This document shows, piece by piece, positions 22,214 through 24,069 of a stretch of 64,000 nt of DNA. A program made the position numbers and the translations under genes. Position 1 is the first letter of the stretch, and each line of letters starts with the position of its first letter. A model generated the notes under the pieces. That model made no database searches, was not told where the DNA came from, and saw only the letters and a list, made by a program, of their open reading frames with translations. The stretch spans positions 16,988,001 through 17,052,000 of the forward strand of contig NC_135667.1 of the NCBI RefSeq assembly GCF_964188315.1, written 5' to 3'. This DNA is from Podarcis muralis (Eukaryota).

Positions 22214-24069
22214 ATGCTGAGCAGAGGGCAATTTCTGCTACTCCAGCTCCTGTACACTTTTACGAATCTCTGCAAGCTGATCCTGAGTAGTCCTCGGCTT
22301 GTGACAGGTGAACACAGATCTTCCTCCACTGGGCCTGCTTCCACCCCACTCATCCCCAGCAGCAGTGAGTGCTGCAGAAGTGACCATGGCTCAGTGCTAT
22401 TCCTTTCAGGCAGAAGATCCCAGGTTCAATATCTGCATATCCCGTGGAAAGGGTCTGGAGTAGGAGATGATGGGGAAGACCTTCCAGCTGAGATGCTGGA
22501 GAGCTGCTGCCAGTTGGGGTAGACAATACTGATCTAGGTTTAAGGCTGCTTCCTAGACCTTGCCTTATGAACCCTAGGATATTTCATTTGGCTGTGTGAA
22601 GGGTCTCTCCACAGTATAATTTTGACCCCGGGCATTTCCACGCTACTCATTTTAAACTGCTTTAATTGGAAGCCATAACAGGGAGTCCTTGGATTCTGAT
22701 CTAGAAATGTGTCAACAATCTTGCATTATTTTTACATGGCTAGGGATGGTTCCAGCCCTGAACCAACCAAGTTAAGGCCCTTTGAAACTACTTTACATGT
22801 TATACTTGTTGAAGTGATATAGTTACTGCCAAAATTCCCCATTACCGCAGTAGCTTCCAAGTAGGTTCTCAGTGGAGATTATCGTCCCAATAAGGTTCTG
22901 ATGATGTTGGATTGCTGAGGCCTCTTTCCTTCTCCACGTTCGTCTTGCAGCACAGATTGTAGCAGGAAACATTTGCTCCTTTTTAACTTCCTCTCTTGCC
23001 CAAGCAAAGTAAAGGGCTGTGTGGGGCAACTGTTCGCAAGGCCAAAAGGAGTTTGCGGTGGGTTGTGTGTGGCCTAAATCAGGGCTAATATAAAGCATTA
23101 GCGTTGTGTGGCTGGCTGGAAGAGGAATATTCATTGCTGCTGCAATGCAAGGGCGTGACTGTTCATGGAACAGGAAATTAGTAGCAAATGTTTCTTGGAA
23201 AACAGATTTTTGTGTGTGCTTGCGTTTGTAATGAGGTAAATGGACTAAGCACAGGAATGCTAAAAGCGCCCACTGATGGGAGGTGCTTTTGGGGCCCACA
23301 GCTCGTGCAGGAAACCCAGGGAATGCCACTGAGACGGATTTGTCCCGACATCAGCCGCTCTGGTTTGATTATCCCGACACGGATGAGAAGAAGATCCTTG
23401 CTATTTACAAGCTCATTGGAGAGCAGCCTGAGTATATTCCCCCAAGTGAGTCCCCCTGCCACTCCTGTCTCTTGACCCGCTCTCAAACGCTCCCTCCCCA
23501 ATAGCACCTACAGGGGAGGGGGCTGAGCACAGCCTTTGCAGGCACCAAGTCCCAGCAGCTGCAATCCCTGGCATCTCCAGGTAAGAGCTGGGAAAGACCC
23601 AGAGTGCCACTGATGGCCTGAGTTGACCATATTAGGCTAGCTGGACTAATGGCCTGATTCCCCCTGCTCTATGCCTAACCTCTGCTGTCCTCCCCTTCCA
23701 GAATGATTTAGGGCTGCTTTGGGCTTCCTCCTCCTTGCCCTAGCTCTGCTCTAGCCTTGCCCTATTTCCCCGTGACAAACCAACCCTCCTCTTCTCTGAC
23801 CCCTGCAGGTTCATTCCCTCACCAGCTGCGTTATATCCTAGTGGGATCCATTATACTCATCCTGCTGTTCTTCCTCTATCAGATCATATCTAAAGTGTAC
23901 GTGTCATTTTGGCTGGTGTACGTTATGCTGCAAGTATTCTCCCTGCCTCCTTACTGCCTTTGGATGTCATTATTTACTCCCACCTCCACAGATGGAATGA
24001 CACCCCCTCCCCTCCTTCTTCTTCTTCTTCCGCAATTTCAGGATCTTCAAGAAGTCAAATGCAGGATAA
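22214..24069 (+). CDS. FIMP1: Fertilization-influencing membrane protein 1 (C16orf92) orthologue, ~117 aa
   Basis: Exon 23302-23445 encodes WFDYPDTDEKKILAIYKLIGEQP, matching the mammalian FFDYPDSDQARLLAVAQFIGEKP motif as recalled. Exon 23809-23896 is a TM helix (YILVGSIILILLFFLYQII). Exon 24042-24069 encodes IFKKSNAG*. Candidate signal-peptide exon 22214-22307 (MLSRGQFLLLQLLYTFTNLCKLILSSPRLVT, phase-1 donor) is less certain. Tail-to-tail with TLCD3B as in human. Confidence 0.85.
22375..22550 (+). mobile_element. Degenerate tRNA-derived squamate SINE
   Basis: GGCTCAGTG...CCCAGGTTCAAT...GGAGAGCTGCTGCCAGT...GTAGACAATACTGA. Related fragments at ~20535 and ~23560. Confidence 0.6.

What the first reader, a model, noticed from the sequence alone, without database searches (positions are those of the whole stretch)
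23302..24069. Squamate orthologue of the sperm-egg fusion factor FIMP1 (C16orf92)
Seen: exons encode the FDYPD-x-D-x4-LA-x3-IGE-x-P motif, a TM helix and a short basic tail. There is an NAT glycosylation sequon, and the gene is tail-to-tail with TLCD3B. Established: mouse FIMP is testis-specific and needed for sperm-oocyte fusion, and is usually discussed as mammalian. Inference: this part of the gamete-fusion machinery predates the mammal-reptile split, and the FDYPD core marks the functional surface.
Basis: partly seen in the sequence, partly recalled or inferred. Interest (0 to 1): 0.75.

Follow-up and report, generated by a model that had tools for sequence, protein, structure and literature searches.

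The report
Wall lizard FIMP sperm-fusion gene
This stretch holds the common wall lizard's copy of FIMP, a small sperm membrane protein needed for sperm-egg fusion in mice; the call is correct, but gene databases already list FIMP in lizards, snakes, turtles and amphibians, so it is a confirmation rather than a discovery.

Summary
Window 23302-24069 (+) carries exons 2-4 of the Podarcis muralis FIMP/C16orf92 orthologue. Exon 1, which encodes the signal peptide, lies upstream at 22214-22307.

- **Family match:** exon 2 alone passes the Pfam FIMP model (27.1 bits, cut-off 25). It is 100% identical to the RefSeq protein "uncharacterized protein C16orf92 homolog [Podarcis muralis]".
- **Position:** the gene sits tail-to-tail with a TLC-domain gene (TLCD3B). 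The same arrangement holds in another Podarcis, a snake, a turtle and a whale.
- **Tree:** the gene tree follows the species tree.
- **Motif:** the lizard has WFDY where human FIMP has FFDY. A 2026 cryo-EM preprint shows FFDY is the TMEM95-binding motif. The hydrophobic residues of the helix that follows are conserved.
- **Transcription:** contigs of a related lizard's run show the exon 2-exon 3 splice (GT..AG) with exons far deeper than introns.

Testis specificity, exon 1 usage and the exon 3-exon 4 splice were not shown.

Named or Pfam-passing relatives occur in turtles, a caecilian, frogs, platypus and coelacanth.

Novelty is low. NCBI already names squamate FIMPs, and three papers report a wider-than-mammal distribution.

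The parts
22214..22307 (+). FIMP exon 1: ATG and predicted signal peptide (31 codons plus 1 base, phase 1), donor G|GTGAAC. An alternative longer form ends at 22364 with donor GTGAGT.
   Evidence: tblastn of the P. lilfordi and P. raffonei FIMP models; sequence; translation. The short form matches the Pogona, Hemicordylus and Pantherophis models. It was not covered by the reads laid.
22386..22454 (+). Alternative first exon used by the RefSeq P. muralis model P0001. It has no signal peptide and is probably a minor form or a mis-model.
   Evidence: tblastn of P0001. None of the other squamate models aligned has this N-terminus; the P0011 (Anolis) and P0004 (Varanus) N-termini were not compared.
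23302..23445 (+). FIMP exon 2: ectodomain with the NAT sequon (23322-23330), the WFDY motif (23361-23372) and the helix EKKILAIYKLIGE.
   Evidence: Pfam FIMP 27.1 bits, above cut-off 25; 100% identical to RefSeq P0001. A contig of run X1 covers exactly 23300-23447 at depth 365, against about 12 in the flanking introns.
23809..23896 (+). FIMP exon 3: membrane-proximal stretch and transmembrane helix, donor GT|GTACGT.
   Evidence: Joint 23445->23809 (GT..AG) in a depth-127 contig of X1. Pfam positions 101-123. AF2 of the orthologue P0002 gives helix 82-116 with block-mean pLDDT above 90 over residues 91-110.
24042..24069 (+). FIMP exon 4: short basic cytoplasmic tail (V)IFKKSNAG and stop TAA at 24067-69.
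   Evidence: Translation. 27/27 bases identical to P. raffonei, while intron 3 is only 72% alignable. The tail is homologous to those of other squamates and to the mammalian SFQKGA tail. The splice itself was not seen in reads.
24136..24163 (+). Two AATAAA polyadenylation signals (24136-41 and 24158-63) ending the gene.
   Evidence: Sequence.
25496..26436 (-). Last exons of the TLC-domain neighbour (TLCD3B), tail-to-tail with FIMP.
   Evidence: PF03798 TLC domain hits of 43.6 and 25.4 bits. The same arrangement is seen in P. raffonei, snake, turtle and whale.
21735..21990 (+). Last exon and 3' end of MVP (major vault protein), the upstream neighbour.
   Evidence: tblastn of an MVP fragment; MVP Pfam domains in the P. 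raffonei locus. About 20x RNA-seq coverage in runs X19 and X20 that show no FIMP reads.

Best explanation
This is the intact, single-copy Podarcis muralis orthologue of FIMP (C16orf92). It is a four-exon gene encoding a type I single-pass membrane protein of about 117 residues.

Shown here:
- membership of the FIMP family;
- positional orthology;
- the motif and the transmembrane segment;
- transcription and the exon 2-exon 3 splice, in a closely related lizard.

Inferred: as in mammals, the protein sits in the sperm acrosomal/equatorial membrane. Its aromatic loop (WFDY, equivalent to human F68-F69-D70-Y71) and the following short helix (I, L, I at the human V82, F85, I86 positions) dock onto the conserved basic surface of TMEM95. 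The resulting TMEM95-FIMP pair would belong to the larger sperm fertilization complex needed for sperm-egg membrane fusion.
For: - Pfam PF17672: exon 2 alone scores 27.1 bits (cut-off 25). Full-length Podarcis orthologue models score 49-51 bits over profile positions 41-128 of 130.
- 100% identity to RefSeq 'C16orf92 homolog [Podarcis muralis]'.
- Squamate, turtle, caecilian and mammalian FIMPs are retrieved by a squamate profile.
- Only 71 cluster representatives exist among 1.84e9 proteins; the motif regions I read show no second, paralogous group.
- Synteny is MVP-FIMP-TLC in P. raffonei, Pantherophis and Malaclemys, and DOC2A-like C2 gene-FIMP-TLC in Kogia. The TLC exons are present in the window.
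- In the tree, squamates (98/97) and mammals (94/96) are each monophyletic.
- At the TMEM95-contact positions, aromatic-F-D-Y, I86, G87 and E88 are the same in all ten squamates and conserved in nearly every other clade tabulated; the exceptions are one turtle (N at 70) and the two unnamed contigs (Q at 70; L at 86). Position 82 is I/V/T and position 85 is L/Y/W/F in squamates.
- Published mechanism: cryo-EM, alanine scan; FIMP co-purifies with TMEM81.
- AF2 of the 94-96% identical P. lilfordi protein gives a signal helix at 4-17, disorder at 24-47, a helix at 59-70 (equivalent to human 76-86) and a transmembrane helix at 82-116.
- Reads: the exon 2 contig has depth 365 and the spliced exon 2-3 contig 127, against about 12 for introns and 9 for MVP. 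Three P. muralis-labelled RNA runs that do express MVP or TLCD3B show no FIMP, which fits tissue-restricted expression.
Against: - No lizard functional data exist.
- The tissue of the positive run is hidden, so testis specificity is not shown.
- Exon 1 and exon 4 were not covered by laid reads. The one contig covering exon 3 runs on through its donor to 24024, so intron-3 retention may be common.
- The presence and interface residues of lizard TMEM95 could not be checked, because no TMEM95 sequence was available by reference.
- Position 68 is W, not F.
- The RefSeq model for this species uses a different first exon without a signal peptide.
Confidence: 0.85

Rival explanations
1. It is a true FIMP orthologue, but in lizards it acts in another process or with another partner and is not required for sperm-egg fusion. 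The motif would be conserved for a different interaction.
For: Function and expression tissue are untested in any non-mammal. Fertilization proteins often change roles; SPACA4/Bouncer switched sex of action (PMC8488580). The upstream neighbour differs between sauropsids and the whale.
Against: The exact residues that contact TMEM95 in the human structure are the most conserved part of the protein across sampled clades from coelacanth to mammals. Expression is absent from three RNA runs that express the neighbours, which fits a restricted germ-cell pattern.
Confidence: 0.1
2. The main product in this species is not the conserved type I protein. It is either the RefSeq-style isoform (first exon at 22386-22454 without a signal peptide) or an intron-3-retaining form with a long unconserved tail.
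For: The RefSeq model P0001 has that structure. The X1 contig runs through the exon 3 donor to 24024, and no contig showed the 23896->24042 joint. The Varanus model also reads through.
Against: - The read-through tail is not conserved: intron 3 has 43 gap columns between two Podarcis species, and the P0008 tail is in a different frame beyond the leucine run compared with the window.
- Exon 4 is 100% identical between the two species, and its tail aligns with those of other squamates and mammals.
- The signal-peptide exon at 22214 is shared by lacertid, agamid, cordylid and colubrid models.
- Contigs drop minor or short branches, so a missing joint proves nothing.
Confidence: 0.1
3. It is a decaying relic (pseudogene) that still resembles FIMP.
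For: Small fast-evolving reproductive genes are often lost. No named bird or crocodilian FIMP was found.
Against: The reading frame is open across all four exons with canonical splice sites. There are 43 invariant columns among five squamate models from four families. It is transcribed and spliced at high depth in a relative.
Confidence: 0.03

Closest known systems
Mammalian FIMP (human C16orf92, mouse 4930451I11Rik), Pfam PF17672
   Same: Same family by HMM. Same architecture: signal peptide, disordered stretch, aromatic-FDYPD-x-D loop, short helix ending in IGE-x-P, one transmembrane helix and a short basic tail. Same genomic position, tail-to-tail with TLCD3B. About 30% identity overall, with the TMEM95-contact residues conserved.
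   Different: W replaces F at human position 68. W is also found in turtles, caecilian, platypus and coelacanth, so it is probably ancestral. The upstream neighbour is MVP rather than DOC2A. The region between the signal peptide and the motif is unrelated in sequence. Function and testis expression are untested in lizards.
RefSeq/GenBank squamate FIMP models (P. raffonei, P. lilfordi, Sceloporus undulatus, Hemicordylus capensis, Pantherophis guttatus, Pogona vitticeps, Anolis carolinensis)
   Same: Direct orthologues, 53-96% identical, with the same exon structure and the same neighbours.
   Different: The P. muralis RefSeq model itself (125 aa) has a different first exon and a read-through C-terminus. 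The window supports a P. lilfordi-like 117-residue product instead.
TMEM95-FIMP complex / SPARK sperm fertilization complex
   Same: The lizard protein keeps the motif that binds TMEM95 in the human cryo-EM structure.
   Different: The complex has only been shown in human and mouse. Lizard TMEM95 was not examined here.

Membership tests
FIMP (Pfam PF17672) | Scores above the curated Pfam gathering threshold | tested here: met
   Exon 2 alone: 27.1 bits against cut-off 25, E 4.5e-6. Exon 3 adds 12.7 bits. Podarcis orthologue models score 45.6-51.4 bits.
FIMP (Pfam PF17672) | Aromatic FFDY loop that binds TMEM95 (human F68, F69, D70, Y71) | tested here: met
   WFDY at 23361-23372. F, D and Y are identical, and position 68 is aromatic W, as in all sauropsids sampled, caecilian, platypus and coelacanth. 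Motif role.
FIMP (Pfam PF17672) | Short helix after the loop with hydrophobic contacts (human V82, F85, I86), ending in IGE-x-P | tested here: met
   I, L, I at those positions and IGEQP. AF2 helix 59-70 in the P. lilfordi orthologue.
FIMP (Pfam PF17672) | Type I topology: cleavable signal peptide plus one C-terminal transmembrane helix and a short tail | tested here: met
   The transmembrane helix is in exon 3 (AF2 block-mean pLDDT above 90 over residues 91-110). A hydrophobic N-terminal exon lies at 22214. Signal-peptide cleavage was not predicted with a dedicated tool, and exon 1 usage was not seen in reads.
FIMP (Pfam PF17672) | Positional orthology: adjacent to and convergent with TLCD3B in the 16p11.2-syntenic block | tested here: met
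   TLC-domain exons on the minus strand at 25496-26436. Same arrangement in P. raffonei, snake, turtle and whale.
FIMP (Pfam PF17672) | Testis-specific (spermatid) expression | tested here: inconclusive
   Spliced and abundant in run X1 of a related lizard whose tissue is hidden. Absent from three P. muralis-labelled RNA runs that express MVP or TLCD3B.
FIMP (Pfam PF17672) | Required for sperm-oocyte fusion | not testable with these tools
   Known only from mouse knockouts (PMC7196805).
TMEM95-FIMP complex | Direct ectodomain binding to TMEM95 of the same species | not tested
PMC9482655 states that TMEM95 reaches back to amphibians.

The most novel reading that the evidence does not exclude
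FIMP is not a mammalian addition to the sperm fusion machinery. It would be a sarcopterygian-age gene, present in coelacanth, caecilian, frogs, turtles, squamates and all three mammal groups. Its ancestral TMEM95-binding motif would be WFDY, changed to FFDY independently in therian mammals and in frogs. That would make the TMEM95-FIMP pair an old, testable module in egg-laying vertebrates, with archosaur copies highly diverged or lost.
Probability: 0.55. Interest if true: 0.4.

Novelty: already known. Interest (0 to 1): 0.2.

Why it matters
Several fertilization papers still treat FIMP as mammalian. PMC8488580 says it 'lacks clear nonmammalian homologs', and its 'reptile' search taxon 8459 is in fact turtles only. 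The SPARK preprint lists it among the additional factors essential 'in mammals'.

The lizard gene confirms that the TMEM95-binding loop is conserved in the sampled tetrapod groups (squamates, turtles, a caecilian, frogs, mammals) and in coelacanth; no named bird or crocodilian copy was found. This supports the loop as the functional surface. It also offers non-mammalian systems for testing whether the TMEM95-FIMP pair acts in animals with very different eggs.

Databases and three papers already show the wider distribution, so the added value is confirmation and detail: the gene model, W as the likely ancestral residue, and synteny.

Tried and rejected
- **PDB sequence search** with exon 2 found no FIMP chain. 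The cryo-EM entry is not in the copy, so residue mapping used an alignment to a macaque protein with human-like numbering.
- **Tissue of run X1:** ids are coded. A 2017 P. siculus study with only brain and testis libraries exists (PMC5617171), but I cannot link it to X1-X4, so I make no testis claim.
- **Coelacanth and Rana synteny:** the look-ups gave no DNA.
- **Organisms behind two unnamed contigs:** a paper search for the run accessions found nothing.
- **Earlier notes of this scan** on TMEM95, IZUMO or SPACA6 in this genome: none.
- **RefSeq alternative first exon as a dispersed repeat:** rejected, because the tested 24-base stretch occurs once in the window.
- **Joined protein:** The 94-96% identical P. 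lilfordi protein P0002 stood in for whole-protein Pfam, alignment and folding.

Full report
**What is there.** On the + strand the window holds a four-exon gene.
- Exon 1 (22214-22307) starts with ATG and encodes a hydrophobic N-terminus, MLSRGQFLLLQLLYTFTNLCKLILSSPRLVT. It has a phase-1 donor G|GTGAAC. A second possible donor, GTGAGT, follows 22364.
- Exon 2 (23302-23445) encodes an NAT sequon and then WFDYPDTDEKKILAIYKLIGEQPEY.
- Exon 3 (23809-23896) encodes the transmembrane helix.
- Exon 4 (24042-24069) encodes the tail (V)IFKKSNAG and the stop codon. Two AATAAA signals follow at 24136 and 24158.

The only slips are the motif spacing (LA-x4-IGE, not x3) and the missing first exon.

**Identity.**
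- Exon 2 alone passes the curated Pfam threshold for PF17672 FIMP (27.1 bits against 25, E 4.5e-6). Exon 3 adds a weak hit to the transmembrane part of the same model.
- The exon is 100% identical to a RefSeq protein named 'uncharacterized protein C16orf92 homolog [Podarcis muralis]', which also tells us the genome.
- Sister-species models are named 'fertilization-influencing membrane protein' and score 49-51 bits over Pfam positions 41-128 of 130.
- A profile of five squamate proteins retrieves named FIMPs of lizards, a snake, turtles, the caecilian Geotrypetes and about 30 mammals.
- An exhaustive HMM search of 1.84 billion representative proteins finds only 71 clusters. Reading their motif regions showed no second, paralogous group to confuse orthology.
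- A maximum-likelihood tree recovers squamates (98/97) and mammals (94/96, with platypus, then marsupials, then eutherians). The gene tree therefore follows the species tree.

**Synteny.** Minus-strand exons at 25496-26436 carry a TLC domain, so the tail-to-tail TLCD3B neighbour is real. The order MVP(+) - FIMP(+) - TLC(-) holds in P. raffonei, the snake Pantherophis and, with an 844-residue upstream gene, the turtle Malaclemys. In the whale Kogia the order is C2-domain gene (DOC2A-like) - FIMP - TLC. The FIMP-TLCD3B junction is thus conserved across amniotes, while the upstream neighbour changed. Earlier notes of this scan place ALDOA and other 16p11.2 genes further along the window; I did not retest those.

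**Transcription.** I laid four runs on 21300-25500.
- Two bulk RNA-seq runs labelled as the window's species cover the last MVP exon at about 20x but give nothing on FIMP.
- A single-cell run covers the TLCD3B 3'UTR but not FIMP.
- Contigs of a 2017 run of a closely related lizard (organism A) include one contig matching exactly 23300-23447 at depth 365.
- The same run has a depth-127 contig with a GT..AG joint 23445->23809. Introns sit at about 12 and MVP at 9.

So exons 2 and 3 are spliced as predicted and the RNA is abundant in that sample, while expression elsewhere looks restricted.

Three things are not shown: the tissue (ids are coded), exon 1 usage, and the exon 3-exon 4 splice. The spliced contig in fact runs on through the exon 3 donor to 24024, so intron-3 retention may be frequent.

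I still favour the short tail. Exon 4 is 27/27 identical between two Podarcis species, while intron 3 is full of indels. The read-through frame is not kept in a third Podarcis contig. The tail also aligns with those of other squamates, turtles, platypus and eutherians.

The RefSeq model for this species (P0001) uses another first exon (22386-22454, no signal peptide) and a read-through end. The conserved signal-peptide exon argues that this is a minor form or a mis-model.

**How it most likely works.** This part is inferred from mammals.
- Mouse FIMP is a testis-specific type I membrane protein of the sperm equatorial segment, needed for sperm-oocyte fusion (PMC7196805).
[quoted passage not shown] A loop (residues 62-75) with F69, D70 and Y71 hydrogen-bonds to TMEM95 K67, W90 and R70. 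A short helix (76-86) packs V82, F85 and I86 against TMEM95. F68A, F69A and Y71A each abolish binding.
- FIMP also co-purifies with TMEM81 as part of the proposed SPARK complex.

Mapped through the alignment, the lizard has W-F-D-Y at 68-71 and I, L, I at 82, 85 and 86, plus the invariant IGE. AlphaFold2 on the 94-96% identical P. lilfordi protein gives a signal helix, a disordered stretch, a helix at 59-70 (equivalent to human 76-86) and a confident transmembrane helix.

I therefore expect lizard FIMP to bind lizard TMEM95 through the WFDY loop on the sperm membrane. I put this at about 0.6-0.7; it was not tested because no TMEM95 sequence was reachable by reference.

**Age of the family.** Position 68 is W in all squamates, turtles, the caecilian, platypus and coelacanth, and F in therian mammals and frogs. 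W is therefore probably ancestral.
- Named hits include four frogs and Latimeria LOC106705789. The Latimeria motif exon passes the Pfam cut-off (27.2 bits), although its model lacks the transmembrane exon.
- Two unnamed contigs may be archosaur copies. One joins a spliced MVP 3' end, 76-87% identical to turtle MVP, to a FIMP-like ORF. The other is 73% G+C.

**Novelty.** Low. The very gene is in RefSeq and sister species carry the FIMP name. Pfam covers it. PSI-BLAST distributions beyond mammals appear in PMC9482655, the cryo-EM preprint's Extended Data Fig. 10 and the SPARK preprint ('limited and scattered distribution').

The 'mammalian' framing does persist: PMC8488580 says FIMP lacks clear non-mammalian homologues, and its 'reptiles' taxid 8459 is Testudines only. 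The finding is a correct reading of raw sequence, not a new discovery.

Noticed in passing
window 22386-22454 and 23897-23966: The RefSeq P. muralis FIMP model (P0001, 125 aa) starts in an alternative exon without a signal peptide and reads through the exon 3 donor. It disagrees with the conserved squamate structure and looks like a minor isoform or a mis-model.
   Followed up: partly
window 23809-24024: In run X1 the contig that carries the exon 2-3 splice continues through the exon 3 donor (23896) for 128 more bases. Intron-3 retention may be common, echoing the two isoforms of mouse Fimp.
   Followed up: partly
P0094 (Latimeria chalumnae LOC106705789): An unnamed coelacanth protein carries WFDYEDDERDKILAIYKFIGEKP and passes the Pfam FIMP cut-off (27.2 bits; profile E 4e-7 in 1.84e9 proteins). 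FIMP may predate tetrapods. The model lacks the transmembrane exon, and synteny could not be fetched.
   Followed up: partly
P0092, P0095, P0096, P0099 (frogs): Frog FIMP-like proteins have FFDY, like therian mammals. The Pelobates model is an annotation chimera that fuses Ig domains ('signal-regulatory beta-1-like') to a FIMP C-terminal part.
   Followed up: partly
L006:1-1438 and L005:1377-1778: Two unnamed run contigs carry FIMP-like ORFs. L006 joins a spliced MVP 3' end (76-87% identical to turtle MVP) to a WFQY-motif ORF 120 bases downstream. L005 is 73% G+C with WFDYPDDD and a transmembrane helix. They may be crocodilian or bird copies; the organisms are unknown.
   Followed up: partly
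window 21735-22213 compared with L003: The upstream neighbour of FIMP is MVP in lizard, snake and turtle, but a C2-domain (DOC2A-like) gene in the whale. This points to a rearrangement inside the 16p11.2-syntenic block.
   Followed up: partly
window 21905: A 4-base deletion in the MVP 3'UTR appears in 14 of 26 reads of run X19 and in none of X20. It is probably a heterozygous indel polymorphism.
   Followed up: no
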